A stretch of DNA of 64,000 nt from Octopus sinensis. Lineage: Eukaryota. The notes beneath the pieces were generated by a model. That model did not search any database, was not told the DNA's origin, and worked only from the letters and a program-made list of their open reading frames with translations. Location: positions 93,682,001-93,746,000 of the forward strand of contig NC_043005.1 in the NCBI RefSeq assembly GCF_006345805.1, in the 5' to 3' direction. Made by a program: the position numbers and the translations under genes. Below are positions 12,561 through 63,349 of this stretch, one piece after another. Numbering within the stretch: position 1 is the stretch's first letter; each line of letters begins with the position of its first letter.

Positions 12561-12614
12561 ATGAAGCAGTTGTTTCCTCCCACCACTCTCACTTTCTCTT
12601 CTCTACAACATTAT

Positions 12615-15693: not shown

Positions 15694-15726
15694 CACTTTT
15701 TTCTCTTGGTTTTCTTGAGAAAATTG

Positions 15727-17029: not shown

Positions 17030-17037
17030 GAAAATTG

Positions 17038-18805: not shown

Positions 18806-18898
18806 ATGTCGGGAAGCATGTCGGAAGACAAGAGAGATCTTTATTTTAAAGCTTTAAATTCTCCAAATTATGGCAGTTTGCACGATAAGCAACACAAC
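18806..18898 (+). CDS. POLR1B: POLR1B exon 1 (MSGSMSEDKRDLYFKALNSPNYGSLHDKQHN)
   Basis: ATG at 18806 (alternative ATG 4 codons later), donor GTAAGA at 18899, phase 0. Resembles the RPA2 N-terminus (human LKHLTDPSYG). Confidence 0.8.
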
Positions 18899-27645: not shown

Positions 27646-27686
<41 letters not shown>

Positions 27687-33600: not shown

Positions 33601-36347
33601 CCTACAGTAGAAAGGATTATTATTGTTATTATTTTGCTTGTTCCTGTGTGTATATATATATATATATGGAGAGAAAGAGGAGGAAGGGAGACCAACAAAG
33701 AAACAAAATGAGAATAGCTGAATCAGTGAAAAAAATAGAAAGGGAAAATATGAAAGAGAGAGCAGGAAGGTCTACATTATAAGAGAATGTGGTTTTTATT
33801 AGAAAAAAGTGAGGGAGAGGAATGTCTATTATTAGAAAGAGCGAGGGGAGAAGGAGGTGTATATTATTCTGCATTCATGTGTTAAAATTGCAGGTACAAT
33901 TGAAATGTTAAACATAGTGAAAGAGTGTCGTGAAGATTTATAAATTCATGCTTTACAAGATATATCAAGCGATAGTGAAATTAAAGTGAAATGACCTTAG
34001 CAAATAGCTGTGGAAATGACCTTCGTAAATAGCTGTGTTCCAGACTAAAACCTGTGGCCATGCTTGGACATCACTGTATTATTTTTGCTGTTAGGTTTAA
34101 ATGCTTATCAGTATTATGAAAGTAGACAAATACCTTCATTGACTGAAGGGAAAGTTGATATGATTGTTACTGAGACAGACATGTCAGTAGGTTGGTGCAC
34201 CTACTGATGCAAATAGAAAAATATATAATAGATATACAAGTGTTCATCATCATCATCATCATCGTTTAACGTCCGCTTTCCATGCTACATGGGTTGGACG
34301 GTTCAACTGGGGTCTGGCAAGCCCGAAGGCTGCACCAGGCCAGTCAGATCTGGCAGTGTTTCTACAGCTGGATGCCCTTCCTAATGCCAACCACTCTGAG
34401 AGTGTAGTGGGTGATTTTATGTTGCGAGGGTAAATCTAGAATTTTATTAATCTCGGGTAGATTTATGCCATTCATATTGCATTCAGTTCACACAGTCTGT
34501 AAAGTGTTTTATGTGATCACAGACTCTGCCTTTTTCATAATAAATATTTGAATTGGTTCATGTTTTGTATTTCTGTTTATGTGTGTGTGTCACATACAGT
34601 TTATATAGTCTTGTCAGTAAGTGAGCTCATACTCTTTCATATGTACATATAACTATATGAAATATAGTTTGTATTTATTTACTCTGTAAATATGTAATTA
34701 AGATTGTAAATAATAAACATTTAATCTATATATATATATATATAATGTTTTACCTTTCTAATTCATTTTTTTATTTCCTTAAACTCTAAAGCACATCATA
34801 TCTGTCAAATGTATTACAAAGTAAATAAGCAATACATTCGAAATTCATTTCAATTATATTTAAAAGCAGTTTTGAAACTCCTTGTTTGTGTTTAATATAC
34901 TAACATTATGTTTTCAAATGTGCTGGCTTATACTGTGGAATTTCCCTCCCTGGGTCCTGCTAGTTATTATTAAACAAATTTCCTTGTTTTATTGTGATAC
35001 AAGTCTTTCCACTACTCTGTCACATTTACCTCACATATTGTAATATCTCTTAGGAGAATCACTTCTTGATGACTCTGTTCTGTCACATGAAACATTTCTC
35101 TTTGCTCTAACATACATTACTAACTGAAGGAAGCTGTTTGGTACCTCTTAAAGGTTCTTATGATCATCTTCATCTATCTCTACAGCATTAGCTACAAGTC
35201 CCAGATTCCTTCACTATCTATCAACTGTCCTTACCTGGCCAGTAAAATAAGTAATATTTTCCCGGATAGGAGACCAAGTTACTGAATATTGGAATATTCA
35301 GATGTTCAGAAAAGTATAAAAATGTGTAAATAAAAAAGAGTCCACGAAAGACAAGGGAGAGGAAATGAAATAAGGACAGCTACTGGTAATGATAATCTAT
35401 CGTATTAGAAAGTGTTTCTTACAACTGGTGAGGTTGTGCACTAGTTTCCAACTCAGTTGTGACAAATACCAGCACGACTAAGGCTAACAGTTTTCTGATT
35501 TTATATCTGTTGTCAGCTCATTGTTTGAATACTCTAACATTTCTGTTCTTTTTAGGTACTTCTTTATCAAATAAGGATTAACTGAAATTAATTGAGTATC
35601 ACTGGTATTATATTAAAACATAACAGAATTTGTATTCATCTCATTCCTTTATAGCCTTTATGCATAAAACAACCATCATTGAAGAAAGGCGGAGAGCTTT
35701 TCACTGAATATGCTTTGAAAATAAGATGTCAGAAACCAAATGGCTTTTCAAGGGTATGACAATATTTTGATTTTGTTTAGTAAGTGGTGAGTGAGTCATT
35801 AACATACTGGTATTCCAATTTACTGGTAACATTTTCATAGCTACCATATTATATTCTGAAGACAATTACATTACCTGGTTATCATCACTCAGTCTTTAAA
35901 CAAAGGGAAATATCATCAAGGTTTTCTACCCTAAATGGTTGGTCAGGAAATGAACATTAAGTTGTAAAATAGAAAAAGCATCTGTGCATATTGCCATGCA
36001 TTTTAGAAGTTGACATAGAAGCATGTGGTTTGGTATTCAGCTTCTCTGCACAACACTATGAGAAAGTGTCTTCTACTGGGCCAACCTAGGCCTTCTGAGT
36101 GAATTTGGCATTATAGCTATTAGGCCCCCATGATGATGACGGTTTGTGTAGGACCTGCACTCTTTGGAAATATTGATAGCAGAAAGTTGGTGCCAATGTT
36201 TATCACAAACTCAATGAACAACATACCACAGGCTTTTCTATTAATTCTCCATCTCTTGGTTAATTGCTTTCGCTACAGCTTAGAACCCAACCCACCCTGG
36301 TAGGCTAAATATCTACCTAGGCACCAAACCCCAAATTTCTAAGTCCT

Positions 36348-39300: not shown

Positions 39301-42300
39301 CTCTCGGATCACAACATGGTAGAGCTGACCATGTACGGGCCAAAGGAAAGCATGGACATGCAGCCTACAAGAAACTCTCAGAATCTTTCCAGCTTGAACT
39401 TCCATAAGGCAAACTGGAAACAAATTGAGAAAGAGATCCTCAAACAAAACTGGCCTGAATGTCTATCCTCGCCAGACATCGACATGAAACTTCAACAATT
39501 CATGTCTGTAATGCAAGCCATATGCTACAAATGTGTCCCAGAGAGAAAGGCCACTGTACACAAGAGCAAAATCCCTAGAGAGAGGAAAATTCTAATGAGA
39601 CGGCGTACAAAAGTTTCAAATCGCCTAAACAAACAAATTGAAAGCAGTGAAAAGTCCCGCCTGAAAATAAAACTTTTGGAAATTGAAAAATGTCTGCAAC
39701 TCTCCCATGAAAAAGATGGAGCAGACAAAGAAGCCTGGGCTATATACAACATAAAATCTAACCCCAGAGCTTTCTACAGGTATGCCAAAGAAACAGCTAC
39801 AGTTCACTGTAGGATAGGGCCACTCATTGAAAAGGATGGCACACTCACAGGAAATCCAACGAGGGTAAGTGAAATACTAAATGAGCAATTCAAGGGTATT
39901 TTCACTCCACCCCTAGGGCATTTTCAAGTCAGCAATCCAACTGACTTCTTTACCACTGCAGATATAAAATCAGAGGCAGCGATGATTGATTACATCAATA
40001 TAAAGGAAGACGATGTAATAAAGGCTATTGATGAAATGAAAACAAACTCAGCTACTGGCCCCGATGGATTCCCAGCAATCCTTCTAAAAGTATGTAAGAG
40101 AGTCTTAGCAAGACCACTGCAGTTCCTCTTTCAGAGCTTCCTTGCAACTGGCAAACTTCCAAGAAAACTGAAGGAAGGTAAAATATGCCCTATTCATAAA
40201 GGAGGTAGCAGAGCGGAGGCCAAGAACTACAGACCTATCTCTCTGACCTCACACATCAGCAAGGTCGTGGAACGAATAGTCAGAAGGAAACTAATCACCT
40301 TCCTTGAAGAAAATGACTTGCTGCCTGACACCCAACATGGTTTCCGACCAGGAAGAAGCTGCTTAACTCAGCTCCTACAACACTATGACCAGGTGCTGAA
40401 ACGACTGCTCAACCACTCACATGTAGAAGTCATGTATCTCGACTTTGCAAAGGCCTTTGATAAAGTCGATCATGGAATGATATGTCACAAACTGCGTTGG
40501 AAAACTGGGAGAATGGCTTCATGACTTTCTGAAGGATAGAAGTCAGGTGATAGTAGCCAACTTCCATTAACACGCACATAGTGAGCGGTGTTCCGCAAGG
40601 CACTGTTCTGGGACCACTACTGTTCATAATGGCCCTCTCAGACATGCCCTCAGCCACGCAGAGAGCCACGATCACAAGTTATGCAGATGATACAAAAGTT
40701 TCACAGGCAATACAGAACCCTGAAGACACTAAGCACCTGCAATGTGAGCTGGACAAAATATACAAGTGGGCTGAAAAGAATAGCATGCAGTTCAATGCTG
40801 AAAAGTTTCAAGCTTTATACTATCAGCATGCAAAACTAAATGCAATACCCAATAAATACACTGGACCTGGAGGGATTGCAATCCCAGAGGCACAATCAGT
40901 GTGAGACCTGGGTATTTACATGAATGATGATGCAACCTTTCATGTGGATGTTGCTAAATTAGCAATGAAATGTAGGCCGCTGACCGGATGGATTCTTAGA
41001 ACCTTTAGAACAAGAGACCAGGAAACCATGATGGTCCTCTGGAGGACACTTGTCCTAAGCCACTTTGACTATTACTCTCAGCTATGGTCACCATCCGGTG
41101 TCAAGTTAATCACAGAACTTGAGGTGATCCAACAAAGTTACACGAAGAAGATAGCCTCTGTGCAGCATATAAGCTATTGGGAAAGATTCAAGAGATTGAG
41201 GCTCTATTCCTTAGAGCGTAGGCGAGAAAGATATGCCATAATATACATCTGGAAGATCCTAGAAGGACTTGTCCCAAATTTTGGCATCGAGAGTTACACA
41301 AATGCCAGAACTGGGCACCACAGCGTGGTGCCTAGGACTCCAAATTTGCCATCAAGATGTAGGACAAGATACTGTGATAGCCTGGGCTTCCGAGGCCCAC
41401 AGCTCTTCAATATCCCCCCGAAGAACCTAAGAGACCTGCATGGGGTGGGTGCAGATGTCTTTAAAATGAAACTGAATCTCTTCTTGTCAGGTGTCCCAGA
41501 TGAACCAACTTCACGGCAGGAGGTGCAGATGAGGGCAGCTGCATCGAACTCTCTCATGCACCAGATGGCATTTGCTAAAAAGCATTCGTGAAGTAAAATC
41601 ATGTAGCAACACCAAATGGCAGTGCCCCAGCTTGGCCACAGCTTGTGAGCTGAAACTAAATAAAATAAAATAAAAAAAATAAAAATACTGTATTTATTCC
41701 AGTTCATTGTGTTCTGTGTTCAAATGTTGCTGAGGTCAACTTCACCTTTTCATCTTCCAGGGTTGTTAAATAATGTATCGCCAGTCCAGTGTGATAGACT
41801 TGTGGAAACATTCAAGTATTAGACCAGATGTCATGCAGTATTTGTATCCAACCCATTGCATTCTGAGTTCAAATCCTGCCATGTTCTACTTGGGTGGTAG
41901 ACTTAATTCATTACTTGATTTTTAATGCCACCACTTGGCACCTTTGGCTGTCACCACTCTGTTGATAGCATTTGGACTAAGTCTCTCATTGGAGGATACC
42001 TTAATCCTACCAATACCATGAACACTACTTTCCCCACTCACTGAAAGGTCAAAACAAAAAAAAAAGCCCACTAACTTTACTTGATGAGGAATTTAGTTAT
42101 CATTTGGTTTTGTTGGTGCAAATTATTTCTTTTGATATAGCTTGGTGTGGAGTATTATTAAACTCAAAACCTGTGACATTATTAAGCCATGTAATTTCTC
42201 AAATTGTTAACGTGGAATCTGCTAATCACTGTTTTATCTTTTCCTTTTCAGGAATTGACTTTTCACTATCTCAGCAATGGTTGTGTCCAAGTTTCATTCC

Positions 42301-45300
42301 AATTTTCTAAAGTTTATTACATTGTGCCAGTTATGTATTTGCTGAAAGTAAGTGTAATCAATTTTACTACGTAATAGACAACACCAGGTCTGCTCAGTGG
42401 TGTGTCATCATAGCTATTCAATGTTATAAACTGATAGATCTCTTACCATATTTCTGTTGAAATATGCTGCCTTTATTTCAGTTAATTTTGAAAATCATGA
42501 AAAATCTCGGTAAAATTTCTTTGTCATTCAAAGCTGGTGTTTAGAACATGAATTTTTGTTGGAAGAATTTTAATTTAGTCTTAGTGAAAGGTTTCAAATT
42601 CGATCCGTTTGAAACAGAAAGGTTATACCATAAAACCAGTAGCAATCTTAGGTGGGTTGATATAAAAAGGGTTAAATTGAAACAGAGACCTATAAAATTA
42701 ATGTGAGATTAAATGATGGCATATTATGGTAAGAAATATTGCAAGATGGGTGGATAGTGGAATCAGTTGAGCATCAGATAAAACACGTAGTGGTATTTGA
42801 TTACCTTTTGATTTTAAACCTAGATCAGGTTCACTGCGCTTATTGTCTATCATCATCATCATCTGCTTTTCATGTTGGCATGGGTTAGATGGTTTGACTG
42901 ACACTAGTAAGCTGAGGGCTGTGTCAGGTTCAAATCCAACTTGGCATGGTTTCCCTCAGCTGGATGCCCTTCCTAATGCCAGGGTACTTTTCACTTTCCA
43001 ACAGCACGGGGGCCAGTTACGTGGTGCCACCATTGGCCATGACTACAATTTCACTTGGCTTTTGATGCATCTTGTCAAGCACAGCCTATCACCAAACATC
43101 TTGGTCACTTGTCATTGCCTCCATGAGGCCCAACATTCGAAGGGTACTTTTTATGTACCTCTTACATTACACCGACATTGGCCACAGTTACAATTTCACC
43201 TAGCTTCATGGGTCTTTTCAAGAACGGCACATCACCAAAGGTCTCAGTCTCTTGTGAGGCTCAACGTTTGACAATCATACTTCACCAACTCATCCCATGT
43301 CCTCTGCCTCTTCCACAGGTTCCCTCCACTGATTGATAAATAAGTTTTGGGGCAGTGGGTGTTGGTTGATGAATTTGATTATTCTCTCGAGATTGCTGCC
43401 TCAGTTTGACCATTGTCCTATAACTGGAAATAAAAAAGCAAATGTAAAATAGAAATGGTGTTGCAGTGTCCGTTTGGAAAACTGACCCCACCAAATATAT
43501 AAACCTGATTCTGTTGGCTTATTGTGGGATGAGTGGTAGTTGTACTGTAGAATAATTCCTAAAGAAACCAAACAGTGCATTAACAGGTGAAGATTTGTTG
43601 AATATTGATTATTGTTCAGAAACCATATTGAAATTATGCCTTTTCTAGTGGAGAAAGTCAGCAGTTTTGAAGTTAATTAGGGACAAAGTTGTTGGGTCTT
43701 CACTTGACAAAATTATTTGGATTGTATCTTCAGTAATATTTTTGCAGCAAGACTACATTTCAATCCTATTCCAGAAGTAAGTGTCTTGCAGCATTTCTTC
43801 TTGCTTTGCATTCTGGATTCAAATCCTACTCTCATCAACTAATAAAGAACCAATCAATTAACTGGAGCTGATGTCATTGTCATTTGTGAGCTTTCTTCCT
43901 TAACCCCCAAATTACTGCTAGTTGTACCTAAATTAGAAACAATTATTATTACAAACATAAAGCATGCTTTCATACATTAAAATATTTCCAGCATTTTCTG
44001 AAAGATTTATGCAATTAGTTTGGAGAATTTCATGAAAGCCACAAGAAACAATGGTTTGAAATGTTTGTCTCTCTTCAGTTAATTTGATTTTAATTAGTTT
44101 TTACTTTTTCATTCAGGGTTTGCTGGATGTCAGTGATAATTATATTTATGATGAACTTCTCAAAGGCAATGAAAAAAATTCTTTTTACAAAAGGTAAAGA
44201 AATCTTTACACCCTTATACATATACACATTCATATACATAAACATGTGTACATATCATATATGTTAAGTATGTGCATTTACATTCCATGTTCTCCCGTGA
44301 AATGCATTGAGCAAAAACTAGTGACATTTGTTGACATCCCCTGCTAGCAAATTTTTTGCAACTCTGCATGTTTGGGGACAGTGGAATGAATAGAAAATTC
44401 ATTACTTGGAAAATAGTTAAACGTTAGAAATAGGAAAGGATGATCTCAGGTAAGTTGATATCAAAACAATTCCTTAATATGTATTCATCCAGTCCATGTT
44501 AGCATAAAAAAACAGACATAAAAATCTATGAAGGAGCAAACAAACTAATATCATTAATTCTCTGTTAATCATTCAATATTGTTGAGTGTATTATTTAGTA
44601 TTCTTATTTTGATTCTTTGAAGTTGTATGGTAACATAAGTTTCCCATTCCTTTACACAATCCTTTGCATTTTATTGAAAGTATTTTTGGTGGGGTGGCTG
44701 AAGGGATTGGGTGGAAGAGGGCAGATAAGGCAGTGCTCCGTAGTCTGCTTCTCTAGGGAAAAACATTCACATCATGACAATTGCTAAGCCCTTGCAACCC
44801 TTACAGTTGAGGGGCCCCATGTTAAGATCAAAGTACGTAGATAAATCATCTATTTACTGGATTAAGATGTTGGACTATTTTAACTGAAAATTTCAAGAAA
44901 TAAAATGTTGATAATACATTGTACCTGCAAAAGTTCTTGTAAAAATATTACATTGTATCACAAACGTCCCTACCTAAATAGGCTTTGCATACTCTGGTCC
45001 TTATTACATAAATTGAAAACGGAAACTCAGTTTTGTTGATGCAACCGAATTGTGCCCAAAGTTTAAATTTTTGATGAACAGCTCCTTTTATTAAAACCAC
45101 TGAAATAGGGTGACAGGATTCTTTGGTAGCAAAATGTAAGCATCCATGGTGACTGTCTGGAAAATAAATTATTTGAAATGACATTTGAAAAAAAAGCTCC
45201 ATAAACGAAATGTCTCACTAAATGAAGCAATGGACAGAAATAAGTTTAATACATGCATTGCATTTTAAAAATTTATATTTCACTGCATGTTCTGTAGCTA

Positions 45301-48300: not shown

Positions 48301-51300
48301 GAATTAAAGGTGTGTAGATTATGAGTTTTGATTGAAGGGATGGAGCCTCAAAACAAAAAGTTGCAGGGGTCCTCTAAAAGTCACGCCCTGTTTCACATTG
48401 CAATCCTTATCAAGTAACACTTGATATTACCTTTCAAATTCTACCAAACACTCTGAAGCGAAGATGAAAGATAACAATGTCTGGAAGTTGCTCCTCATTC
48501 TGGAGCATTAATTGTATGAATGTTTCAACACTTTGGTCTCCAGTGGCTTTACCTCTCAGTCACTGAGCCTTTATCATCATTATTGTCACCTTTTATTATT
48601 TTTATTATTATCATTAATATCTTATTTCAGCTGTATTATATTTATGTTACGTCAACTTTCCAATGAAGATCTTCTTAGTCAGTCAAGTGTACTCAAGTAT
48701 CTGGGTAGTAAATTCCGTGCTATGTACAACAATCCCTGGCTCAGTGATGAGATAATGGGTGAAAGGTTATTGAGGTAAGTTGATCACTTTTGTATTATTT
48801 CTACATGTGCATGTATGCATATACATGTTGCATATGTTGTAAACTGCACTTCTTCCTGAACATGATGCAGCTTTTCTTAATTTTTAATGTTTTGTTCTTT
48901 GTAGCGATTACATTTGTATCCACCTCCAGTCAAATGTCGACAAGTTCAACCTTCTTGTGTAAGTATTCCTGCATTTTTGTTATTTCAATTCTTATCCTTC
49001 TTTTCTTTAATCCATTTTGTTGCATTGTCACTATACCGTTTTGTTAGCCCTGGGTCAGCCTCGATTGAGCACAGCTGTAATCAAAGATCTTCCAGTCTTT
49101 TTGTGTATTGAAACTACATTGTTCAATGTGTTTCATTTTAAAGAAATACATTGTGATTTTGTTGCTATTTCGATCTGGTTAGGTGGCCACAGAGTGGCAC
49201 AATTGTGAGTTCAGTATCATCATTCATCTCGTGTATTCTATTATGGAGTTTAGTTCAAGAATGTTCAACTCTTTCCATCATCATTTTAATGTCTACGAGA
49301 CTTCTGGCAGTTTGCTGTGCTTGAGAAGACACACCAAGCATACAGGCATATTTTCTACATTACTCTCTCAGCAGAGAGATCCTAGTTTTGTAAGTTCATG
49401 GGTGCTGGTGCCATGTTAAAGGCACCCAGTCCACACTCTGTTAAGTGGTTGGCATTAGGAAGGGCATCCAGCTGTAGAAACCATGCCAAAACAAACAAAC
49501 GGAGTCTGGGCAGCACTTCAGCTGACCAGATCCTGTCAAACTGTCCAACCCATAGCAACATGGAGGACACATGTTAAAAGAGGATGATTTTCTATGCTTG
49601 CATGGGTCAGATATGAACATGTGGAGCTGAGTTTTCTATGGCTAATCTACCTGATATAACCCCCACTTGTGTCCAAGGCAGGAAGTAATCTCCCAGTCTA
49701 CCAAACAATAAACAGCCCAGACATGTTTGTGTGAAGAACTGGAAACAAATGACACTATGGTCGAGCTTTTTGCTTTCAAAGATCTCAAAGCCTGGACATG
49801 CTCTCACAATGGACTGCAAGCAAACACCAGTAGCAAAGCCATTGTTTATATGTGTAGACAAAGGAAATACAAGCACACATGAACACACACAAACATACAT
49901 GCACACGCATGTGTGTAATGGGTTTCTTTCAGTTTCCATCTATCAAATTCACTCACAAGGCTTTGGTTAACCTGGAGCTATAGTAGAAGACACTTGGCTG
50001 AGGTTCTTTGCAATGGGACTAATCCCAAAACCATATGATTAGGAAAATATATAAGACACATATATATCACTTTTTTATATATACCACTTTTGTCAATGTA
50101 TTTACTGATGTGTATGTATATATGTTTGTGTATATATATATATATATATATGAATGGCACAATCATATGTACCAACTTTTCAATAGTAATTTTTCACAAC
50201 TTTGGGAATATCTTTCCAATGATATTTATTATAATAATTAATCGAATATATAAAGCATAATTTTCAGGTAAGTTCTGTATTTTTATTATTAATTAAAAAT
50301 ATACTGTATATTGCTATTTGATATTTACATGTTCCAATGAATTGTTACTTTTGCCATAATTAACTCCATCCAATCAAATGGAGGTAACATCATTACTATT
50401 TTTGTTATTGGGTAACCATTAATTGGCTCATATTTTACAAATTTAAAGTGTTTAACCCTTTAGTGTTCAGATTACTCTGTCAAATGTGATGTTTGGTTAT
50501 TTAAAATGGTTTGAATTAATCATGCATTATCTTGTAGTTTAGAGATTTCAGTGATGTCATTTTTTAGTTTTAGAACGACATGGTAGGGCTGAGGTGAGAG
50601 GTGAGATCTGGTCAGTTTCAATATAAAACAGGTTAAATATTTTGGCCAGATATGGCCGGTTTGAATGCGAAAGGGTTAAACAGCTAATTACATACTTAAT
50701 GGTGCCTTTCAAACTTCAAAGTTGAAATAATATTGTCTTGTCTTTAATTACTTAGTCTATTTCTGTAATGGTTTATTCATTCATTCCAACTGGCTAAAAA
50801 TGATAGCTATGGTAAAATATAAAACCAGTTAATATACATAGTTCATAAAATTGCTGTAAATTCTTTGCAGTTACCTGGTTAAAAAACTGTATGCTTTTGT
50901 CCGTGGTGAATGTGCTGCTGATAACAGAGACAGTATAATAAATCATGAAGTTTTGGATGCTGGTCGCCTGTATTCCTTGGTACTTTTTGTAAGTATTTCT
51001 GTAAATGTTTTACCTTTTTACATGTTTCAGTCATTGGTCTGTGACCATGCCTCGAAGGGTTTGGTCAGGTTTTATTTTTTGAAATTTGATACTTTTCCTA
51101 TTGGCCCCTTTTGCTGAACTGCAAACTTATAGGAATGTAAACAAATCAAAATACTGGATCTCAACCAGTGGCAGAGGGCACAAACAGAAAGATGGACAGA
51201 CATACACACACGATGGACTTTCACACTGTTTCTGCCTACTAAATTCACTCCCAATCCCAAAGCATTCGTCGGTCTGGGCTATAGTAGAAGACACTTGAAC

Positions 51301-54256
51301 AAGGTGCTCTGCAGGTGGATTGAACTTAAAATCACATGGTTGCAAAATGAGCTTCTTAACCACACAGCCATGCCTCTGCCTGTATATTGACTTTATTTCA
51401 ATTAATTTTGAAATTCAATTAAATATCTTTATCATTAATAAGCTGGTGTTTAGAACATAAATTAACAAGAAATCTCAATGGAAGGTTTTCACTTAGATCA
51501 CTTTTAGCATTCAGATTACTTTATCAAATCTATTCCTCTTGTTTTCAACTAACAATGTTTTATTTCTAGAAAGACATTGTAGGATGGGTGTGAGAGGCTG
51601 GATCTGACCAGTTTGAATGTAAAACAGAATGTTTGTGCTGGGTATGGCCAGTTTAAATGCTAAAATGTTAAAACAGGAAGTTTTTACCATAGAATGAGAG
51701 ATGGCTGCAGGATGTATGAAAAGGTTGACACCAGAAGGTTTAATTCTTCACTGCTCTTTAATGCATATTTCAAAATGACTTTGAAGCTTTGTACCATTTT
51801 CTTATCTCATTCTTTACAACCGAATTGATTCTCTATATCTGTGAATTCTATCTGTACAATATCATTTTTTGCTTATAATTTCATCTTTTAGATGAAATAT
51901 CAAATAAAATGAAGCCTCTCAAATGCTAATTAAATTATTTTAGTTGGCTTCTGAAATTATCATCTCACTCCAAATGTTGCTTTCGGGATTTTGATTTCAT
52001 TTTTGACTTCAATCTGTAGGGGTGCTGTCTAATCCCAGGTCAGCCTTTATGAAGTAGAGTGTCATGGGTTTTTCTTTTTCAGACAGTGTAATAAGACTAC
52101 GTTACCCAATATGTCTTTCCTTTCTTGAAATGGTAGACTGCATCGCTCTGATTTTTGGAACAGGTTGGGATTACTTGGTGGCCTCGCTATTGTGGGTGTC
52201 ACAAAAACATATATATATGATATATATATATATCTACACACACACATAGATGTGTACTTTTACAGAATATGTGTATAAACTTTTCCAGTTTGTAGTTCTA
52301 ATGTAATTCTTCATTAATTTCCAGGACAATTTGTACAAATGGTTGCGAAGTATCCAATATGAAATCAACAAGTTGCTCTCTTCTAAAAGTTACACGACAA
52401 TAACTCCTGGTATTTTATCAATTTCTTTATTTTATACAACTTTCTATGTGTACTATTTTGAATGATTTAAGGATGGTGGAATGTCCATTCTGTAGGGTTT
52501 TGGACTAAATATCTAATCCTTTAGTTTTGCCCCCTGCTCTCGAAGTTCAGATTGGTTAACTTCTTGAATATGGATGTCTTGAAGCTGACCTTTGACCTTT
52601 TGAACAAAACAGAAATGATGAAATGAAAGAGAATGGAAACCTCTTGCATATGACACACAATATATTTAATTATAAGCATTGTTTACTATGCTTAATTAAT
52701 TAGACTTCATTACCATTTTAGAGTATCTCTGTTTAATGATGGCTGATATAAATGTTGGTTGCTTTCTCCTCTCATGTTTTACACTATAGGGAGAGAGAGA
52801 ACAAAAGAGCTACAGAGAGAGTTAACATAGGAGGTGCAGGATGAGTGCACATACTTGGCTTGGCAGCAGGCAATGAATAAAAGAAAGCTGCACACACAAA
52901 CACACACAGAGTAAGAAAGAGGGAGAGGCTCATAGAGCCAAGGGTGAGGAGAGGGAGTAAATGTGAGAATAGTTGTGAGAGGAGGAAAAATTAGTTTTAT
53001 TTTTCGTGTAAGGTAATATATATATATACATATATATATAACAAAGTGAAGTTGTAAGGTACCGCACGAGTGGAATTATATATGAAAGAATGTTTGAAAA
53101 TGCAATTTTAAAAGATATTTATTCACTTGACCGGTTTCACTTTTTTAGAAAAAGATTGTCAAAAGTAACATGTAAAAGCTTTGTTGTGTTAGGTACTGGT
53201 TGTCACAAAATATTATTATCAAAGAATGTATATATATATATATACATTCTTTGATAATAATAAGAACATGTTAAAAACAGTTTACAAGGCAAAATCTTGG
53301 GAAAATATTAAAAAGTTCATTAAAATATTAGGCACAAAAAATTACAATACATATATATATTCTTTGATAATAATAAGAAAATGTTAAAAACAGTTTACAG
53401 AAAAAATCTTGAGAAATTATTATAAAGTTCATTAAAAATATCAGGATTTCATTAGAAATCATGTTTGTTTGGAAGTATTTATATATATAGAGAAAATTAT
53501 ACGTTCAAAAAGGTCATATTTTGGTAGTATATATATATACACAGGAGATATAACATGATTAGCATTAGATCTTCCTTCTGGCTCAACTTCTATCACTAAG
53601 TCTCTCTGTCTGTCTCTCTCTCTTACTATTTTTCTTTCCATTATCACCCCCCCCCCCCCCCCGCTGTTTTCTCTCAGTCTCTCCATTACTACCCTCACAA
53701 CAATAAATCTGTTCTTCCCATCTTATTCTCACCCAAAACCTGTAAAATGATTTACTAATTGAGCAGAGATAATGCAGCTTTTACAGCCAGACACCTTTTC
53801 TATCACAAACCATTTTGCAGTTTGTATTCAGTACATTTTATTATGCCTCTGACAGGTTGTTTCTAACTACCTAAAGATTTTCCTCTCCCACTGAATACTT
53901 GTGTTTGATGGTGTGTTATGTAACATATACACACGTGTGTTGAAACAGCTCTTTAGTTGTTTCTTAATATTCATAATATTGGGGGGAAAAAAAGAAATCA
54001 AACATAGAATTTTGCTGAACTACTTAACAGTTGATATGATAAGCAGCTGGATTGTGTTCATTAATATCTATAGCCATTTTAATCATCATTTAACGTCTGT
54101 TTTCCATATGTTGGCTGTGTGGTAAGTAGTTTGCTTCCCAACTATATGGTTCCGGGTTCAGTCCCACTGTGTGGCACTTTGGGCAAGTGTCTTCTATAGC
54201 TTCAAGCTGACCAAAGCCTTGTGAGTGGACTTGGTAGATGGAAACTGAAAGAAGCT

Positions 54257-56686: not shown

Positions 56687-59600
56687 CATACATACATACA
56701 CATACACATACCCATACATATATATACACACATATACATATACACATGCACATACTTATATCTCTACATACTCGCATATACATATATATAATATATATAT
56801 ACACATATACACACACATACATATACCTATATACATGTATATATACACACATACATATATATACACATCTACAATTTGTATCTACACTCACATACCTGCA
56901 CTTACACATAACTCTACATACCTACATATACATCGACATACTCACGTACACTCATATATATACACATATATACATATACACACACACATACATATACATA
57001 TACATATACATACATATATATAAACATACACATACATAATACACATATACACACACATACATATATATATATATACACATACATACACATATATATATAT
57101 ATATATATACACATATATATATATGGCACCCATGCTGGTGGCACATAAAAAGCATCTTTCAAGCGTTGAGCCTTATGGAGGCAATGTAACCAGTGTCGCA
57201 TGACTAGCACCCATGCTGGTGGCATGTAAAAAGCACCTTTCGAGTGCTGGGTCTCATGGAGGCAATGACAAAGGACCAAGACCTTTGGCAATTTGCTGTG
57301 CTTGAGAAGGAAGATCCATCGAACCGAGTGGAATCGTAGTCATGGCAGTTGCTGGTGTCATGCAACTGGCACCCTTGCTAGGGGCATGTAAAAGCACCCA
57401 TTGCACTCTCAGAGTGGTTAGTGTTAGGAAGGGCATCCAGCTGTAGGGACCATGCCAAATCAGGCTAGAGTCTGGTGTACCCCCTCAGCTTACTAGCCCT
57501 GGTCAAACCGTCCAACCCATGCCAGCATGGACAACGGATGATATATGTATATAGAAACACAAATACATCCATGCACGTCGTATGTAAGGGAGATATTCAG
57601 TTCTTGCTCCATCTTGGCAGAATTAAAAGTTTCAATTTGAAATTGAAGAGCAAAGATGCAAAGAACAAACATTTTTTTTTTCTCATTATAACAGGGGTGA
57701 GGAAACCCATGCCTGCAGGCTGGTATACTTGTATGTACAAAATATAGTAAACCTTTCAGTTATAAAATATACACTATATTCCTTTGTCCCTTTTTGACAT
57801 AGGTCGCGTTTCTACTATGACTTAAAACAGATTCAAACAAGAAATCGTCTGGTAATTGCCATTGGAATGGAAATTTTGCTTTCACTATAAAACACATATT
57901 ACTAGGTTTGTGCCACCCCCTTCAGACCCAACTACATTAGCTGGAAAATATAGAATACTTCATAAGTAATATAAATGTCCGAAATTCAGTGGCAACGTTA
58001 ATGAAAATGTTAGACGTTAATTTAATATATATCAAATTATACTTAGAAGATACATACAAGGTTTACACAGATGTAAGAGTTAGAACTTGTGATCTGCTCG
58101 ACGACCTTTCTCTTTGGAAATCTTTGCCCCCCCCCCCAAAAAAAAAGTTCCCCCTCCATTGCATTATAGAGATCTTAAAATTGTCAGCATGACATAATGT
58201 GCTTTTGTAAAAAGTGAATTGATTATGCATCAGTTTCAATGGTCATATTCCAGTCAATGGTACTCCCTATTCAATGAATATAATGCTTGTGGCTGAGTGT
58301 AACCTTCATAATGACTTATGTGAACCTATTTGACAAGGCTGGCTCTTTGAATTACAAGTACAGAAGGTTCCTGAACTTCACCTGTTGAGATGAGAAAATA
58401 AGTTGATCTATAATTATTTTAATTCTGTTTCTTCTTTTGCATCTGAAGTGTGAAACTGTTTGGAAGCCCTTCAACATCAGAAGGGTTTCCACATTGTCTG
58501 ATTTCACTCAAAGGTTTCGATTCAGCCAATGTTAAGAAGATCCTTTTCCAAAGTGCCACTTACTGAGTTCATTCCACTCAAGATATCCTGATTGTGAAAA
58601 CAATGTTTTACACATCCGCCCATGTCAACACCTTCTATGATCCGTGTGCATATGTTCGCATTTATGAAGTTTTTGTTTTTCTTACTTTTTAAAGATATTT
58701 TGAATGAAGCCATTAGGAGGAGAAAAACAATAGTAAGCTATGCATTGAATTATTTAATGGCTACTGGTAACGTTTCTGCTCAATCCAGTGCACCTTTATG
58801 GCAGGTATGTGTCTTATATTTTTGTCTATGATATGTAAACTGAATCTTACTTAAAAGCAAATTTCTACAGTCCTTTTTGCTAACACCATTGCGATCACCG
58901 TTTAATATGCAGTTTTTCATGCTTGTATGGGTTATACAGAAACTGTTGAGGCATGTTTTCTATGACTGGATGCCCTTCCTGCCACCAACTCTCACCTGTT
59001 TTCAAGCAAGGTAATATTTCCCTGTGGCTCGATAAGTGGTCCATGGAAGAGTGGAAACAAATGACATGGCTGTGATACTTGTTTACAACTATCACGCAAT
59101 GTAAACACAAGGAGGCATAAGCACACACATATATACATACAAATATATATATGTGCATGCATGGTTGATGGAAACCAAAGGAAGCCTGTTGCGTGCATGC
59201 ATAAATATGCACTTAATGTATTGATGGGCTTTCTTTAATTTCTGTCTACCAAATCTATTAAGAGCGACTTGGTCAAATTCAGGCTAGAGTAGTAGCACTC
59301 TGTGTCCAAGGTGGCACACAGTAAGACCAAAGCTGAAATCACATAGTTTAGTAGTAAACTTGGATCTTTACCCTTTGAACGGCAGATCGAGAAATCAATT
59401 TTTTGTAACTAAACACTTCCAAACTTCGGACACTGGTAGAATGTGTCATATAAAACATCTTTTACTCTTAGCATTTTTGCAAAAAACATATTTTCAAAGT
59501 TATTTTGTGTTAAAGTTGTCATACTTTGGTAATTTCAACCAACCAATGACGTGTGTTCAGCTGAATAAAATTACTGCCGTTGTTTGTCATCAAGAGCTAT

Positions 59601-60593
59601 CAGCAGTGTATATTTCGTTTGTCATTTATGACATCATTCATGCATTTGAACTGGTTTTAGCTTTAAAGTTTTAGGGTTAGAGTTAGAGTTTCGGAAAAAA
59701 GTGAAAATTGAAGAAATTGGAGAGGGAGAGAAGCAAAAAAGTTTTTCCGAAAATAGTAGCTGTAAAACTGGAAAAAAAAAGAACTAAAAGCAGTAGAAAT
59801 GCACGAACGATTGTGGTAGTGCCATGAAGTAAACATGCTTCAGATAGACTCATTTGTTCATACAAACATAACGGAGATGAAATATGTCATAAACAACAGT
59901 GACAAACGAAATATACACAGCCGGAAGTTGTTGTTGACAAACAACAGCAGTAATTTTATTCAGCTGAACACACGTCATTGGTTGGTTGAAATTACCGAAA
60001 TACAACAACTTTAACATGAAATAACTTTGAAAATATAAGCTTTTCTCAACAACACTAAGAGTAAAAGATGTTTTATATGACACATTCTACCAGTGTCCGA
60101 AGTTTGAAAGTGTTTAGTTATAAAAAATTAATTTCTCGATCTGCTGTTCAAAGGGTAAAGATCCGTAAACTTCAGCAGATTAATGATTTAGTGTCAGAAA
60201 CTCGACTAAATGGTTACAGAGGCTATCATATAAAAGCACCTGTGGAGAACCATGTAAAAATACCCATTATACTCTCTGAGTGGTTGTTGTTACGAAAGGC
60301 ATCCAGCTGTAGAAACCATGCCAAATGCACCTCCAGCTTGCCAGCTTTGGTCAAGGCATCCAACCCATGCCAACATGGACAACAGATGTTAAATGATGAT
60401 GATGGTATTATGTCCAGGACACATTTTTAATAGTTTTTTTCCTTTCTTTTTGTGTAGAAAACTGGTCTTTGTGTCATAGCTGAGCGATTGAATTACCACA
60501 GGTTTCTGTCACATTTTAGAGCTATTAACCGTGGTTCTAGCTTAAAAAAACATAGCATTGCTGGTGTACGCAAACTTTATCCAGAATCTTGGG
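18806..60593 (+). CDS. POLR1B: RNA polymerase I second-largest subunit (RPA2/RPA135), spliced gene, exons 1-16; 3' part lies beyond the window
   Basis: The 16 exons total 1486 nt (495 codons + 1 nt). All have AG acceptors and GT donors with compatible phases and no stops. The joined protein is colinear with Pol I RPA2: SHVDSFN, LYPAECRQRRISY, LGDVPVMVKSNICNL, GEEAEEAGGYFIINGIEKVVR, ICIHL, KKLYAFVRGEC, MATGN, FLSHFR..RG, VRKLYPESWG. Confidence 0.95.
20546..22558 (+). mobile_element. Decayed 5'-truncated RTE LINE
   Basis: MQFGFVPG, FIDLEKTFD and VGVH*GSVLS motifs, a Cys-rich segment and GRGKPRKTW, then 3' UTR and a (GAT)n tail ending at 22558; many stops. Confidence 0.92.
23071..23317. mobile_element. 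hAT (Charlie-type) MITE, 247 bp
   Basis: TIR cagtggttcccaaa / tttggggaccactg (1 mismatch in 14); perfect 8-bp TSD CTATAAAG. Confidence 0.92.
24040..24660 (-). mobile_element. Mariner transposase remnant
   Basis: FLKQLVTGDKKWIVYDNIVRERSW (mariner TGDEKW..YDN) and KLHELGWNLLHH; disrupted. Confidence 0.85.
24710..24787 (+). CDS. POLR1B: POLR1B exon 2 (LIQYLVRSHVDSFNFMLANTLQRSLE)
   Basis: Acceptor tattttcag, donor gtaagt; carries the HVxSFN motif. Confidence 0.93.
26294..26353 (+). CDS. POLR1B: POLR1B exon 3 (SLPEHAFRTEYGQIISFNIK)
   Basis: Acceptor tttattccag, donor gtaagt; 60 nt, phase 0/0; colinear position. Confidence 0.85.
27556..27630 (+). CDS. POLR1B: POLR1B exon 4 (DIFIGNPTVSKSNVSGATQMLYPAE)
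   Basis: Acceptor tttttctag, donor gtaagt; PTV and YPAE motifs. Confidence 0.93.
28837..28956 (+). CDS. POLR1B: POLR1B exon 5 (CRQRRISYTGPLIVTLGWSIDGVKQEAIPKHLGDVPVMVK)
   Basis: Acceptor caataaag, donor gtatgt; CRxRRxxY and LGxVPxMVK motifs. Confidence 0.95.
30613..30678 (+). CDS. POLR1B: POLR1B exon 6 (SNICNLKNLTPTELVQKGEEAE)
   Basis: Acceptor tttgttgcag, donor gtatgg; SxxCNL...EEAE motif. Confidence 0.95.
31985..32550 (-). mobile_element. RTE LINE C-terminal fragment
   Basis: Colinear with 1870-2360. Confidence 0.8.
32760..32834 (+). CDS. POLR1B: POLR1B exon 7 (EAGGYFIINGIEKVVRLIVEVRKNH)
   Basis: Acceptor catttacag, donor gtaagt; GGYFIINGxEKV is a hallmark of the second-largest polymerase subunit. 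Confidence 0.96.
35655..35753 (+). CDS. POLR1B: POLR1B exon 8 (PLCIKQPSLKKGGELFTEYALKIRCQKPNGFSR)
   Basis: Acceptor cctttatag, donor gtatga; aligns to human [25 protein letters not shown]. Confidence 0.88.
37010..37700 (-). mobile_element. RTE LINE C-terminal fragment
   Basis: LEVIDSFHYLG...WAKFRELL...RTTMLHGSGTWAV (ORF 37392-37772). Confidence 0.88.
38350..41690 (+). mobile_element. CR1-clade LINE: end of ORF1 plus near-complete ORF2 (APE endonuclease + RT), inactivated
   Basis: EN motifs LLLNIRGL, IALTETHL, MGDFNLP, LDLCFTN, SDHNMV. RT motifs QHGFRPGRSCLTQL, YLDFAKAFDKVDH, SGVPQGTVLGPLLF, YADDTK. C-terminal LYSLERRRER and a (TAAAA)n tail. Frameshifts near 38.8 and 40.5 kb and a TGA near 40902. 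Confidence 0.95.
42252..42347 (+). CDS. POLR1B: POLR1B exon 9 (ELTFHYLSNGCVQVSFQFSKVYYIVPVMYLLK)
   Basis: Acceptor ccttttcag, donor gtaagt; HYLxNG motif. Confidence 0.93.
44117..44193 (+). CDS. POLR1B: POLR1B exon 10 (GLLDVSDNYIYDELLKGNEKNSFYK-S)
   Basis: Acceptor tttcattcag, donor gtaaag; ends in phase 2, matching exon 11. Confidence 0.92.
45570..48110 (+). mobile_element. Decayed hAT transposase (TTF zinc finger/DUF4371/hAT dimerization, ZMYM1-like) in POLR1B intron 10
   Basis: WLVYS, HEKSMDH, YSIVLDCTP..HQEQMTVIIRF, CRGQSYDNGSNMKGKHCGIQ and C-terminal FPSVL...SFSKLKLIKSYL...QERL; many frameshifts. An RTE tail is inserted at ~47922-48047. TIRs not confidently located. Confidence 0.9.
48631..48774 (+). 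CDS. POLR1B: POLR1B exon 11 (CIIFMLRQLSNEDLLSQSSVLKYLGSKFRAMYNNPWLSDEIMGERLL-S)
   Basis: Acceptor cttatttcag, donor gtaagt; MLR and VLxYLGxxFR motifs; phase 2/2. Confidence 0.94.
48905..48958 (+). CDS. POLR1B: POLR1B exon 12 (DYICIHLQSNVDKFNLL-V)
   Basis: Acceptor ttctttgtag, donor gtaagt; ICIHLxSNxxKF motif; preceded by a 130-nt intron. Confidence 0.94.
50456..50675. mobile_element. piggyBac-type MITE, 220 bp; related copies at ~3650-3880 and ~51500-51670
   Basis: TTAA|CCCTTT...AAAGGG|TTAA structure. Confidence 0.75.
50871..50988 (+). CDS. POLR1B: POLR1B exon 13 (YLVKKLYAFVRGECAADNRDSIINHEVLDAGRLYSLVLF)
   Basis: Acceptor ttctttgcag, donor gtaagt; KLyAxxxGEC..DNxDS..NxEVL motif. Confidence 0.95.
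52325..52409 (+). CDS. POLR1B: POLR1B exon 14 (DNLYKWLRSIQYEINKLLSSKSYTTITP-D)
   Basis: Acceptor aatttccag, donor gtattt; WLxSI motif; phase-1 end matches exon 15. Confidence 0.85.
53123..53168 (-). ncRNA. Decayed minimal type I hammerhead ribozyme (Penelope-like)
   Basis: Minus strand reads UUACUU UUGACAA UCUUU..AAAGU GAAA CCGG UC AAGUGA, with palindromic stem III (ACCGGU), a GUC triplet and stem I pairing. The core differs from CUGANGA at C3 and G8. Confidence 0.55.
54110..54470 (+). mobile_element. Second tRNA-derived SINE family; copies also at ~30840-31000 (+) and ~37980-38120, 49850-50045, 51130-51370 (-)
   Basis: Shared body ggctgtgtggtaag...ggttcagtcccactg...gcactttgggcaagtgtcttctatag. 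Confidence 0.7.
54699..54749 (-). ncRNA. Type I hammerhead ribozyme motif
   Basis: Minus strand reads AGCUUC CUGAAGA UUUC-UCUU-GAAU GAAA CAG-UUCUAGUC-CUG UA GAAGCU: complete core, 6-bp stem I, 4-bp stem III, GUA triplet. Stem II has 3 bp with U-U at 10.1/11.1. Confidence 0.75.
54965..57125. repeat. ~2.1-kb degenerate (CA)n/(TA)n/(CATA)n microsatellite field with a short non-repeat interruption (~55410-55560)
   Basis: Directly visible. Confidence 0.97.
58695..58804 (+). CDS. POLR1B: POLR1B exon 15 (ILNEAIRRRKTIVSYALNYLMATGNVSAQSSAPLWQ)
   Basis: Acceptor ctttttaaag, donor gtatgt; YLxATGN motif. Confidence 0.92.
59362..60164. mobile_element. Non-autonomous Merlin-like element, 803 bp, ~270-bp TIRs, 8-bp TSD
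   Basis: Termini GGATCTTTACCCTTTGAAC / GTTCAAAGGGTAAAGATCC; perfect TSD GTAAACTT (59354-59361, 60165-60172). The TIR shares tggtagaatgtgtca and taactaaacact motifs with 15727-15958. Confidence 0.88.
60458..60593 (+). CDS. POLR1B: POLR1B exon 16 (KTGLCVIAERLNYHRFLSHFRAINRGSSLKKHSIAGVRKLYPESW-G)
   Basis: Acceptor tttgtgtag, donor gtaagt; GLCVxAxxLN..RFLSHFR and VRKLxPESWG motifs are specific to Pol I RPA2. Confidence 0.96.
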
Positions 60594-60989
60594 GTAAGTT
60601 CTACCATTTTGCCAATAAAATGTTTTGATGGATTCCCATCAAGGCATATTTTGCAGTTTTCTTTTGAGTTGTCTTTGTTTTATTAAATGGATGCAAACCT
60701 ACTGCTCATAATGTTTGTGCATGTATAAATGTGTGTGTGTGTGGTCATTTGTTTAATGTATGTTTTTCCATGCTAGCACAGGTTGGATAAGACATTATTT
60801 GAGGTCCTGTTTTTACAACTATATGCTCTTTTTGTTGCTAATTCTTGTCTGTTTTTTAAGATACAAGACTTCTAATTCTACTTCAAAAGTGCTAATCCAC
60901 ATGATAATTTGTTGACAGTAACAGTTAAAATAATGTCATTGGTTCGTTGTTTTTGCTGACAGTCCCATGTGAAAATGTTGTGGAATGGA

Positions 60990-61200
60990 AACATTTACAC
61001 TCACATATGCACTCTCTCTCTCTCCCTCCTTCTCCCATCCCCAAAACATGACACTTCTGCCGCCATGTTTTACAGTAGGTGCTGTGCATTTGTCGCTATT
61101 ATCTTCACCTGGTTGTTGCCATACTCATTTAATACCATCTGACCCAAACAAGTTAATTTTAGTCTCATCAGAAAATTGACTTCGATTCCAAAACTCCTTC
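60990..61200 (-). mobile_element. Tc1 transposase remnant
   Basis: The minus strand reads like FSDETKINLFGSDG....PTVKHGG.SVMFWG. Confidence 0.75.
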
Positions 61201-61358
61201 CCCTTACTTGTTCTATATACTCTGGGAATGCATTAAAGCCCTTTGCGGGGTTACCTTATTTGAATTCTTATTATCGGGTAACTAATTTCATGTTATTATA
61301 TAACTAACTTCACAATTTGGGTATTCATAACTTATTGGGAATTCCTAAAAACAAGACA

Positions 61359-62313: not shown

Positions 62314-62346
62314 AAGATCCTCTGTAAGACACAAAAACTGTTTTAA

Positions 62347-63040: not shown

Positions 63041-63349
63041 TTTGTATTGTTGTTTTTGCTGCTTCCTGGGAATTACCGGCTACGTCAGCTAGTAATATAT
63101 AGTAGGAAACGGTTGAGAATATTGGTTGTTAAGGGGAGGCGATTCTTGATTTTACAAGTAATATTTAGGCGTCTGTATGTATTTTTCAATTGGTTAAGAC
63201 AGTTTAATCAGTATTGTTTATGTATTATATTATGTAATATATATGTATTGATGGATGGGCTGTATCCATATCTATGCATGTGTAGCTACGAAAGGAACAC
63301 TTATCTGTTTTAGTTATATATATGTATATATTGTATATGATTAATTGAT

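What the first reader, a model, noticed from the sequence alone, without database searches (positions are those of the whole stretch)
58695..60593. Intact-looking but strongly divergent Pol I RPA2, rewritten at fork loop 2 and other conserved motifs
Seen: the frame is open with canonical splice sites through 16 exons. Exon 16 reads SHFRAINRGSSLKKHSIAGVRKLYPESWG, exon 15 ATGNVSAQSSAPLWQ and exon 13 ADNRDSIINHE. Established (recalled from memory): human and yeast RPA2 read [23 protein letters not shown] / [23 protein letters not shown], TGNLxSxxGLxLxQ and DNPD. These fork-loop-region motifs contact the downstream edge of the transcription bubble and are normally highly conserved. A-to-I editing cannot restore them (AAC cannot become His; AGA cannot become Pro). 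Inference: this is either a specialised second RPA2 paralog, implying an alternative Pol I, or a lineage whose only Pol I has an altered fork loop.
Basis: partly seen in the sequence, partly recalled or inferred. Interest (0 to 1): 0.72.

Follow-up and report, generated by a model that had tools for sequence, protein, structure and literature searches.

The report
Pol I subunit with rewritten DNA pocket
The window holds the first 16 exons of an intact gene for the second-largest subunit of RNA polymerase I, in which the small pocket that holds the unwound DNA strand is changed at residues nearly all other eukaryotes keep; I could not test whether this is the animal's only copy.

Summary
Sixteen + strand exons (18806-60593), all AG/GT-bounded, give an open 495-codon frame. 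It matches solved Pol I RPA2 chains (human E 3e-90) far better than RPC2 or RPB2 (about 1e-13).

The change is local, not general decay. Across 36 diverse RPA2 N-termini, the window departs at 4 of 59 columns that are at least 90% conserved. All four lie in fork loop 2 or loop B: R195Q, H474N, F479L and T485A. These two elements form the 'A135 pocket', which in yeast Pol I holds the +1/+2 non-template bases. At five core fork-loop-2 columns the window deviates at 5 of 5. Of 185 other RPA2 segments, 169 deviate at none, and the worst deviates at 3.

The Pro of DNPD and the fork-loop-1 'GL' vary among RPA2s.

The whole N-terminal half is fast-evolving: 41-44% identity to slow bilaterians, which share 52-61% with each other.

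No cephalopod or mollusc RPA2 could be reached with these tools. Sole copy versus paralogue stays open. I favour a sole, lineage-modified RPA2 (about 0.55) over a paralogue (about 0.25).

The parts
18806..18898 (+). RPA2 exon 1 (Met1-Asn31), donor gtaaga
   Evidence: Best ATG...GT candidate against the N-terminal probe. It joins exon 2 in frame. The weakest exon call; the true start could be Met5 (18818).
24710..24787 (+). exon 2 (LIQYLVRSHVDSFNF...)
   Evidence: holds the conserved H40, S43 and F44
26294..26353 (+). exon 3
   Evidence: phase 0 to 0, ag/gtaagt
27556..27630 (+). exon 4 (...MLYPAE)
28837..28956 (+). exon 5 (CRQRR...VPVMVK)
   Evidence: same boundaries as locus L018
30613..30678 (+). 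exon 6
32760..32834 (+). exon 7 (EAGGYFIINGIEK...)
35655..35753 (+). exon 8; its first 13 codons (35655-35693) encode loop B, PLCIKQPSLKKGG
   Evidence: An ungapped alignment to yeast A135 puts yeast R219 opposite Q195 (CAA, 35670-35672) and R225 opposite G201. In 35 other RPA2s these columns read R33/35, aromatic 31/35 (window L198) and R/K 31/35.
42252..42347 (+). exon 9
44117..44193 (+). exon 10 (ends in phase 2)
48631..48774 (+). exon 11
   Evidence: L018 has one extra intron inside this exon
48905..48958 (+). exon 12 (DYICIHLQSNVDKFNLL)
50871..50988 (+). exon 13; DNRD at 50920-50931
   Evidence: D366 (yeast D395) is kept and is invariant in 35/35. The R sits at a variable position.
52325..52409 (+). 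exon 14
   Evidence: Best phase-compatible AG...GT candidate; the frame stays open. A poorly conserved linker, so this call is less certain.
58695..58804 (+). exon 15; fork loop 1 starts at 58766 (GNVSAQSSAPLWQ)
60458..60593 (+). exon 16, the start of the fork domain (Pfam Rpb2_3); ends in phase 1 inside the Gly codon of PESWG
   Evidence: It is the only exon-16-like sequence in the window. Its boundaries are shared with L018 and with a fragment from a coral metagenome.
60527..60568 (+). fork loop 2 coding stretch, N474-V487 (NRGSSLKKHSIAGV)
   Evidence: Column counts over 186 RPA2 segments. L479, H482, S483 and A485 are seen in no other sequence. N474 is seen in 3 others and I484 in 3. The window deviates at 5 of 5 core columns, against at most 3 elsewhere.

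Best explanation
This is the 5' 44% (exons 1-16, codons 1-495) of a functional, vertically inherited, intron-rich gene for RPA2 (POLR1B / yeast A135), the second-largest subunit of RNA polymerase I. Its N-terminal half evolves fast, at a nematode-like rate, yet keeps almost every universally conserved residue. The exception is one structural element, the 'A135 pocket' made by fork loop 2 and loop B. [quoted passage not shown] In the window the loop-B arginine (yeast R219) is Gln and the second basic residue (R225) is Gly. The loop-B aromatic is Leu. The fork-loop-2 His is Asn, both Phe positions (F508/F509) are Ser-Leu, and the Thr-Thr pair is Ile-Ala. The pocket Asp (D395) is kept. I infer that Pol I in this animal grips the non-template strand differently. 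It probably uses lysines (K194, K199, K200, K480, K481) for backbone contacts and has no aromatic stacking, which would change bubble-edge stabilisation and pausing rather than catalysis. I think it most likely that this is the lineage's ordinary single-copy RPA2, not an extra paralogue. Shown: the gene model, family assignment, location and rarity of the substitutions, and their clustering. Inferred: the functional consequence, single-copy status, and integrity of the 3' half, which lies outside the window.
For: Gene model: 16 AG/GT exons with an open frame. Family: human, S. pombe and yeast RPA2 chains match at E 3e-90 to 5e-79, against about 1e-13 for RPC2 and RPB2. Pfam Rpb2_1/2/3 are present in order. 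Not a retrocopy: exon boundaries and phases coincide with an unrelated invertebrate RPA2 gene (L018), and for exon 16 with a coral-metagenome fragment. Constraint: 55 of 59 columns that are at least 90% conserved are kept. The window's count of departures (4) is unremarkable against a range of 0-11 in 35 other RPA2s. Clustering: all 4 departures fall in the 7 conserved columns of loop B and fork loop 2. The hypergeometric P is 7.7e-5. Other sequences place 12 of 97 departures there. Rarity: the window deviates at 5 of 5 core fork-loop-2 columns. Among 185 others, 169 deviate at 0, 12 at 1, 3 at 2 and 1 at 3. The named deviants are microsporidia or a metamonad; several, including the 3-deviation protein, carry no name. 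Role of the residues: R219, R225, D395 and F508 are named as the A135-pocket contacts in yeast Pol I elongation complexes (PMC6435322). Residue correspondence comes from ungapped PDB alignments. Single copy is favoured only by prior knowledge: RPA2 is single-copy in animals as far as I know, and no second exon 16 is in the window.
Against: No RPA2 from a cephalopod or any identified mollusc could be retrieved, so 'lineage-wide' is untested. The N-terminal half shares only 41-44% identity with slow-evolving bilaterians, which share 52-61% with each other. That acceleration is also what a released paralogue would show. The catalytic 3' half (hybrid-binding domain, R714/R957, K916/K924) lies outside the window, so intactness of the whole gene is unknown. 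There is no expression evidence. The definition of 'pocket columns' was made after seeing the data. Exons 1, 3 and 14 rest on weak similarity plus phase and splice constraints.
Confidence: 0.55

Rival explanations
1. It is a second, specialised RPA2 paralogue made by DNA-level duplication, with introns kept. A canonical RPA2 elsewhere in the genome would do bulk rRNA synthesis. This copy would build an alternative Pol I, or a Pol I-derived enzyme, with an altered non-template-strand pocket.
For: The N-terminal half is accelerated relative to other bilaterians. Non-conservative changes are concentrated in one functional element, the pattern expected after neofunctionalisation. Second-largest-subunit paralogues with new roles are known elsewhere: plant NRPD2 for Pol IV/V appears among the PDB hits, and ciliate RNAP paralogues are described in PMC5312943 (listed).
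Against: No second locus was seen; none could be looked for. To my knowledge no animal has two RPA2 genes, and coleoid cephalopods have no whole-genome duplication. Nematode RPA2s evolve equally fast as single-copy genes, so rate alone does not imply paralogy.
Confidence: 0.25
2. It is a copy under relaxed constraint or recently inactivated (a young pseudogene, or a gene broken downstream of the window), and the fork-loop changes are early decay.
For: Only 44% of the coding sequence can be seen. There are no expression data. The overall rate is fast.
Against: Sixteen exons keep canonical splice sites and an open frame over 1486 nt. Of the most conserved columns, 55 of 59 are intact, and the departures are clustered rather than scattered. 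Neutral decay deep enough to change four or five near-invariant residues in a 12-residue loop should also have hit other invariant sites, splice sites or the frame.
Confidence: 0.08
3. It is an artefact: a mis-built exon, a sequencing error in the A7 run inside fork loop 2, or a mis-alignment.
For: The codons for K480-K481 lie in a homopolymer (TTAAAAAAACAT), a typical site of indel error.
Against: The frame is canonical on both sides of the run (FRAINRG... and ...GVRKLYPESWG). Neither alternative frame of the intervening bases gives a canonical fork loop (my reading of the sequence). H474N, S478 and L479 lie upstream of the run, and R195Q and G201 are in a different exon. The alignments to three PDB chains are ungapped.
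Confidence: 0.02

Closest known systems
RPA2 / POLR1B / yeast A135 (Rpa135), second-largest subunit of RNA polymerase I
   Same: Best and near full-length match over the part present (human residues 103-387 and 430-495; E 3e-90). Same Pfam domain order and the same ancestral intron positions. Keeps GGYFI.NG.EK, SHFR, RG, VRKL.PE.WG and the pocket Asp.
   Different: The loop-B Arg (R219) is Gln and R225 is Gly. The loop-B aromatic is Leu. In fork loop 2, His is Asn, the invariant Phe is Leu, the [RK]-T-T run is S-I-A, and no aromatic residue is left. The N-terminal half is about 10-15 identity points more divergent than in other sampled slow-evolving bilaterians.
RPB2 (Pol II) fork loop 2, LSHLRR(T/L)N(T/S)PIGRDGKLAKPR
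   Same: Same position in the fold. The window's Asn474 matches the Asn that Pol II has where Pol I has His (alignment).
   Different: The rest of the loop is unlike Pol II. The whole protein matches RPB2 only at about 1e-11. According to PMC6435322, Pol II and Pol III cannot form the loop-B pocket at all.
Bacterial RNAP beta-subunit pocket for the +2 non-template base (core recognition element pocket; beta W183, D446)
   Same: PMC6435322 describes the A135 pocket as its analogue: a flipped +2 base, an aromatic stacking on +1, and a conserved Asp. The window keeps the Asp.
   Different: The window lacks the aromatic residue that corresponds to beta W183 / A135 F508-F509. Any sequence-reading role is therefore doubtful. 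This is a comparison of function only, and no homology test was made here.
RPA2 of microsporidia (Binucleata, Hepatospora, Nematocida) and Carpediemonas
   Same: These are the identified RPA2s in the sample that also depart at core fork-loop-2 columns, for example H to N or T to I/V. They show that the loop tolerates change.
   Different: They deviate at 1 or 2 of 5 columns; the one protein at 3 of 5 (P0052) carries no name. None loses the Phe. They are extreme fast-evolving parasites or protists, whereas the window is a bilaterian gene with large introns.

Membership tests
RPA2 (Pol I second-largest subunit) | Closer in sequence to RPA2 than to RPB2, RPC2 or archaeal Rpo2 | tested here: met
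   Human, S. pombe and yeast RPA2 match at E 3e-90, 2e-83 and 5e-79. The next best are archaeal Rpo2 at 8e-16, RPC2 at 1e-13 and RPB2 at 3e-11.
RPA2 (Pol I second-largest subunit) | N-terminal domain order: protrusion (Rpb2_1), lobe (Rpb2_2), fork (Rpb2_3) | tested here: met
   PF04563 at 7e-41, PF04561 at 2e-9 and PF04565 at 2e-8. The last is cut off by the end of exon 16.
RPA2 (Pol I second-largest subunit) | RPA2-specific domain 4 (PF06883), hybrid-binding domain (Rpb2_6) with the catalytic Arg/Lys residues, and clamp/anchor (Rpb2_7) | not testable with these tools
   These are encoded downstream of exon 16. No exon 17 lies in 60594-64000, and the source genome could not be reached.
RPA2 (Pol I second-largest subunit) | Canonical fork loop 2, H-R-G-x-[FAYS]-F-x-x-[ML]-[RK]-T-T-x-V-R | tested here: not met
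   The window reads N-R-G-S-S-L-K-K-H-S-I-A-G-V-R, with 5 of 5 core columns deviating. This conserved feature is not part of the family's formal definition, so failing it marks a variant rather than excluding membership.
RPA2 (Pol I second-largest subunit) | Loop-B basic and aromatic residues of the A135 pocket (yeast R219, F222, R225) | tested here: not met
   The window has Q195, L198 and G201, where others have R in 33/35, an aromatic in 31/35 and R/K in 31/35.
RPA2 (Pol I second-largest subunit) | Conserved pocket Asp (yeast D395; Rpb2 D399; bacterial beta D446) | tested here: met
   D366 is present and the column is invariant in 35/35.
RPA2 (Pol I second-largest subunit) | Single-copy orthologue in its genome | not testable with these tools
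   No cephalopod or mollusc sequences and no source assembly were found in the protein, metagenome or contig look-ups.
Processed pseudogene / retrocopy | Loss of introns | tested here: not met
   There are 15 introns in 495 codons, at positions and phases shared with L018.

The most novel reading that the evidence does not exclude
The animal carries two RPA2 genes. This one would be a specialised paralogue that assembles an alternative Pol I (or a Pol I-derived polymerase) whose non-template-strand pocket has been re-engineered. That would parallel the way plants derived Pol IV/V from Pol II, and would be the first such case in an animal.
Probability: 0.2. Interest if true: 0.8.

Novelty: new variant of a known kind. 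Interest (0 to 1): 0.45.

Why it matters
In yeast Pol I, fork loop 2 and loop B form a Pol I-specific pocket that grips the +1/+2 non-template bases when the cleft closes (PMC6435322). The pocket's core residues are kept from fungi to vertebrates, nematodes, sponges and most protists sampled here. A free-living bilaterian that has replaced both arginines and every aromatic residue of that pocket, while keeping the rest of the subunit, is a natural experiment on what the pocket is for: bubble-edge stability, pausing or translocation bias. If this is the only RPA2, the pocket is dispensable or replaceable for rRNA synthesis. If it is a paralogue, it points to an undescribed polymerase variant in animals. 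Either outcome needs only data that exist publicly: genome assemblies and RNA-seq of the source and its relatives.

Tried and rejected
1. Close relatives. The search for homologous proteins with exons 15+16 found no candidate. With the 496-aa model it gave only 11 hits, at 34-40% identity, none molluscan. The word index seems to miss full-length RPA2s.
An alignment of single exons to a scaffold was meant to get round this, but MAFFT misplaced most exons, so I abandoned it. Exon 16 alone ran: 356 hits, with best per-protein identity 65% (P0104, over 40 of the 46 residues). None shares the motif.
3. The metagenome scan found only protist, archaeal and other distant loci.
4. Exact look-ups of four window ORFs, to identify the source assembly, were not on record.
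5. Literature searches for POLR1B with cephalopod or octopus found nothing. Supplements of two cephalopod editing papers do not mention RPA2. The SINE string is not in any paper.
6. An alternative canonical exon 16 (mutually exclusive splicing) was looked for and none is in the window.
7. A pair of compensating frameshifts around the A7 run does not explain fork loop 2. Neither other frame resembles the canonical loop.
8. An editing-complementary sequence for exon 8 was looked for and none was seen within about 1.2 kb.
9. P0040 looked like a possible relative (it shares LKGLLDVSD.YIY and KLYPE.WG). It comes from a compact, intron-poor genome and has a canonical fork loop 2.
10. Rfam and tRNA scans of the window were empty.
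They served as leads only. The resulting exons 5-13, 15 and 16 were then checked against PDB chains, and exons 1-4 and 14 against database RPA2s.

Full report
What is there. A tblastn probe, followed by enumeration of phase-compatible AG...GT intervals, located 16 exons between 18806 and 60593. Joined, they give 1486 nt with an open frame of 495 codons plus the first base of a Gly codon. Every internal boundary is ag|...|gt. The finding's span covers exon 15 (58695-58804), intron 15 and exon 16 (60458-60593). No exon 17 lies in the remaining 3.4 kb.

Checking the model and the family. The model was checked against solved structures. Exons 5-13, 15 and 16 match human RPA2 (7ob9_B residues 103-387 and 430-495) at E 3e-90. 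They match S. pombe and S. cerevisiae RPA2 at 2e-83 and 5e-79. Archaeal Rpo2, RPC2 and RPB2 reach only 8e-16 to 3e-11. Pfam finds Rpb2_1, Rpb2_2 and the start of Rpb2_3 in order. This is therefore the 5' 44% of an RPA2 (POLR1B/A135) gene. Exons 1, 3 and 14 are the least certain calls.

The recalled human and yeast strings are correct. Their weight differs. I took 186 RPA2 segments: the best 150 of 356 hits to exon 16 in a 1.84-billion-protein library, plus earlier hits. In these the fork-loop-2 columns are very conserved:
- 474: H182, N3, S1.
- 479: F180, W4, S1.
- 483: R105, K77.
- 484: T169.
- 485: T179.
The window has N, L, S, I and A at these columns. Its L479, H482, S483 and A485 occur in no other sequence. 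I scored five core columns: His; aromatic; Arg/Lys; Thr/Ser; Thr/Ser. The window fails all five. Of 185 others, 169 fail none, 12 fail one, 3 fail two and 1 fails three. The deviants that carry names are microsporidia and a metamonad.

The other two motifs are weaker. In DNPD only the Asp, Asn and final Asp are conserved, and the window keeps them. The Pro column reads P15, A6, V5, M3, L2, Q1, S1. The exon-15 string is fork loop 1. T437, G438, N439 and Q450 are kept. The changed 'G-L-D' columns are only 70-84% conserved, and the window's residues recur in a few other RPA2s.

I aligned 36 diverse RPA2 N-terminal halves and counted, leaving each sequence out in turn, its departures at columns where at least 90% of the others agree. 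The window departs at 4 of 59 such columns. That total is ordinary (range 0-11). All four are in two short elements, however: R195Q in exon 8, and H474N, F479L and T485A in exon 16. Ungapped alignments to yeast A135 give the residue correspondence:
- Q195 is opposite yeast R219.
- G201 is opposite R225.
- S478 and L479 are opposite F508 and F509.
- D366 is opposite D395.
Loop B also loses its aromatic residue: L198, where 31 of 35 others have F, W or Y.

What these residues do. Tafur et al. [quoted passage not shown] R219, R225 and D395 contact that base, and F508 stacks on the +1 base. The pocket resembles the bacterial beta pocket, and Pol II and Pol III cannot form it.

Clustering. Seven of the 59 conserved columns lie in these two loops. 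The chance that all four departures fall there is 7.7e-5. The other 35 sequences put 12 of their 97 departures there, which is the proportion expected at random. The column set was defined after seeing the data, so the P value is indicative only.

What it is not.
- Not a retrocopy. There are 15 introns, and their positions and phases match those of an unrelated invertebrate RPA2 gene with short introns (L018, ENA ERZ25042219) at nearly every junction from exon 5 to exon 16. A coral-metagenome fragment shares the exon-16 boundaries. Both have canonical loops.
- Not scattered decay. The frame, the splice sites and 55 of 59 top-conserved columns are intact.
- Not an alternative-exon system within the window.
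- Not a homopolymer or frameshift artefact. Canonical sequence flanks the A7 run in the same frame, and the other frames do not give a canonical loop.

Rate. Over 363 shared columns, the slow-evolving bilaterians sampled (two fish, amphioxus, L018) are 52-61% identical to each other. The window is 41-44% identical to them, like nematodes at 37-43%. It is 35-38% identical to sponge and fungi, against 38-44% for the slow group. The N-terminal half is therefore accelerated overall. Nematodes show a similar rate with canonical loops, so rate alone does not explain the pocket.

Mechanism (inferred). With both loop-B arginines, the loop-B aromatic and both fork-loop-2 phenylalanines gone, the pocket can hardly hold the bases as it does in yeast. 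The Asp is kept, and several lysines are present in both loops (K194, K199, K200, K480, K481). I therefore expect retained, less specific backbone contacts without base stacking. That would mean a looser or differently shaped downstream bubble edge, affecting pausing or translocation rather than catalysis.

Sole copy or paralogue. This is the question that decides how interesting the finding is, and I could not test it. No cephalopod or identified mollusc RPA2 came back from the protein searches, the metagenome scan, the exact-ORF look-ups or the literature. On priors, RPA2 is single-copy in animals as far as I know. Single-copy fast lineages exist, and Pol I components often co-evolve quickly. 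On that basis I put a lineage-modified sole RPA2 at about 0.55, a specialised paralogue at about 0.25 and a decaying copy at about 0.08.

Verdict. An otherwise well-kept RPA2 has a coordinated rewrite of the Pol I-specific non-template-strand pocket, more extreme than in any of about 185 RPA2s sampled. It is a new variant of a known protein. Its interest is moderate now and would be high if a canonical second copy exists.

Noticed in passing
window 59362-59624 and 59900-60164 (intron 15): A long inverted repeat: two adjoining arm pairs of 133 and 137 nt, 90-91% complementary, separated by about 275 nt. It looks like a foldback or MITE-like element and would form a long double-stranded hairpin in the pre-mRNA, about 300 nt upstream of exon 16.
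   Followed up: partly
window 35670-35672 (exon 8, Gln195, codon CAA): A-to-I editing of the middle base would recode Gln to Arg, restoring the near-invariant loop-B arginine (yeast R219). The fork-loop-2 changes cannot be restored this way. No complementary partner for exon 8 was seen nearby. RNA-seq is needed.
   Followed up: partly
window 360, 26156, 33141, 42869, 47997, 57509, 60357, 62263: A SINE-like repeat family has at least 8 copies on both strands, where 0 are expected by chance. It shares a core ...CATCCAACCCATGCCAGCATGGA..., which in the copy read through (60357) is followed by an ATGATGATG tail.
   Followed up: partly
window 38863-40521 (+, intron 8); 2600-3205 (-): LINE-type ORFs. 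A 553-aa ORF has endonuclease (Exo_endo_phos_2) and reverse-transcriptase domains inside intron 8. A second RT fragment lies upstream of the gene on the other strand.
   Followed up: yes
window 46563-47012 (+, intron 10): An ORF matches DUF4371 (E 6e-9). By my recollection this domain occurs in hAT-type transposase-derived proteins. Neighbouring ORFs at 45570-46088 and 47166-47582 have no Pfam match.
   Followed up: partly
window 27631-27684: A (TAC)n microsatellite starts within about 15 bases of the exon 4 donor (GTAAGTTGTTGTTGTTACTACTAC...). In frame it reads as a run of Tyr codons.
   Followed up: no
L018 7037-7717 versus window exon 11 (48631-48774): The invertebrate RPA2 gene in L018 shares the window's intron positions, but has one extra intron inside what is a single exon 11 in the window. 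This is intron loss in the window's lineage or gain in the other.
   Followed up: partly
window 1-18800: No protein-coding gene is recognisable upstream of RPA2 exon 1, only TE fragments and long (TA/CA)n-type simple repeats. There is no rise in G+C around the putative first exon: the 18001-20000 bin has GC 0.35.
   Followed up: partly
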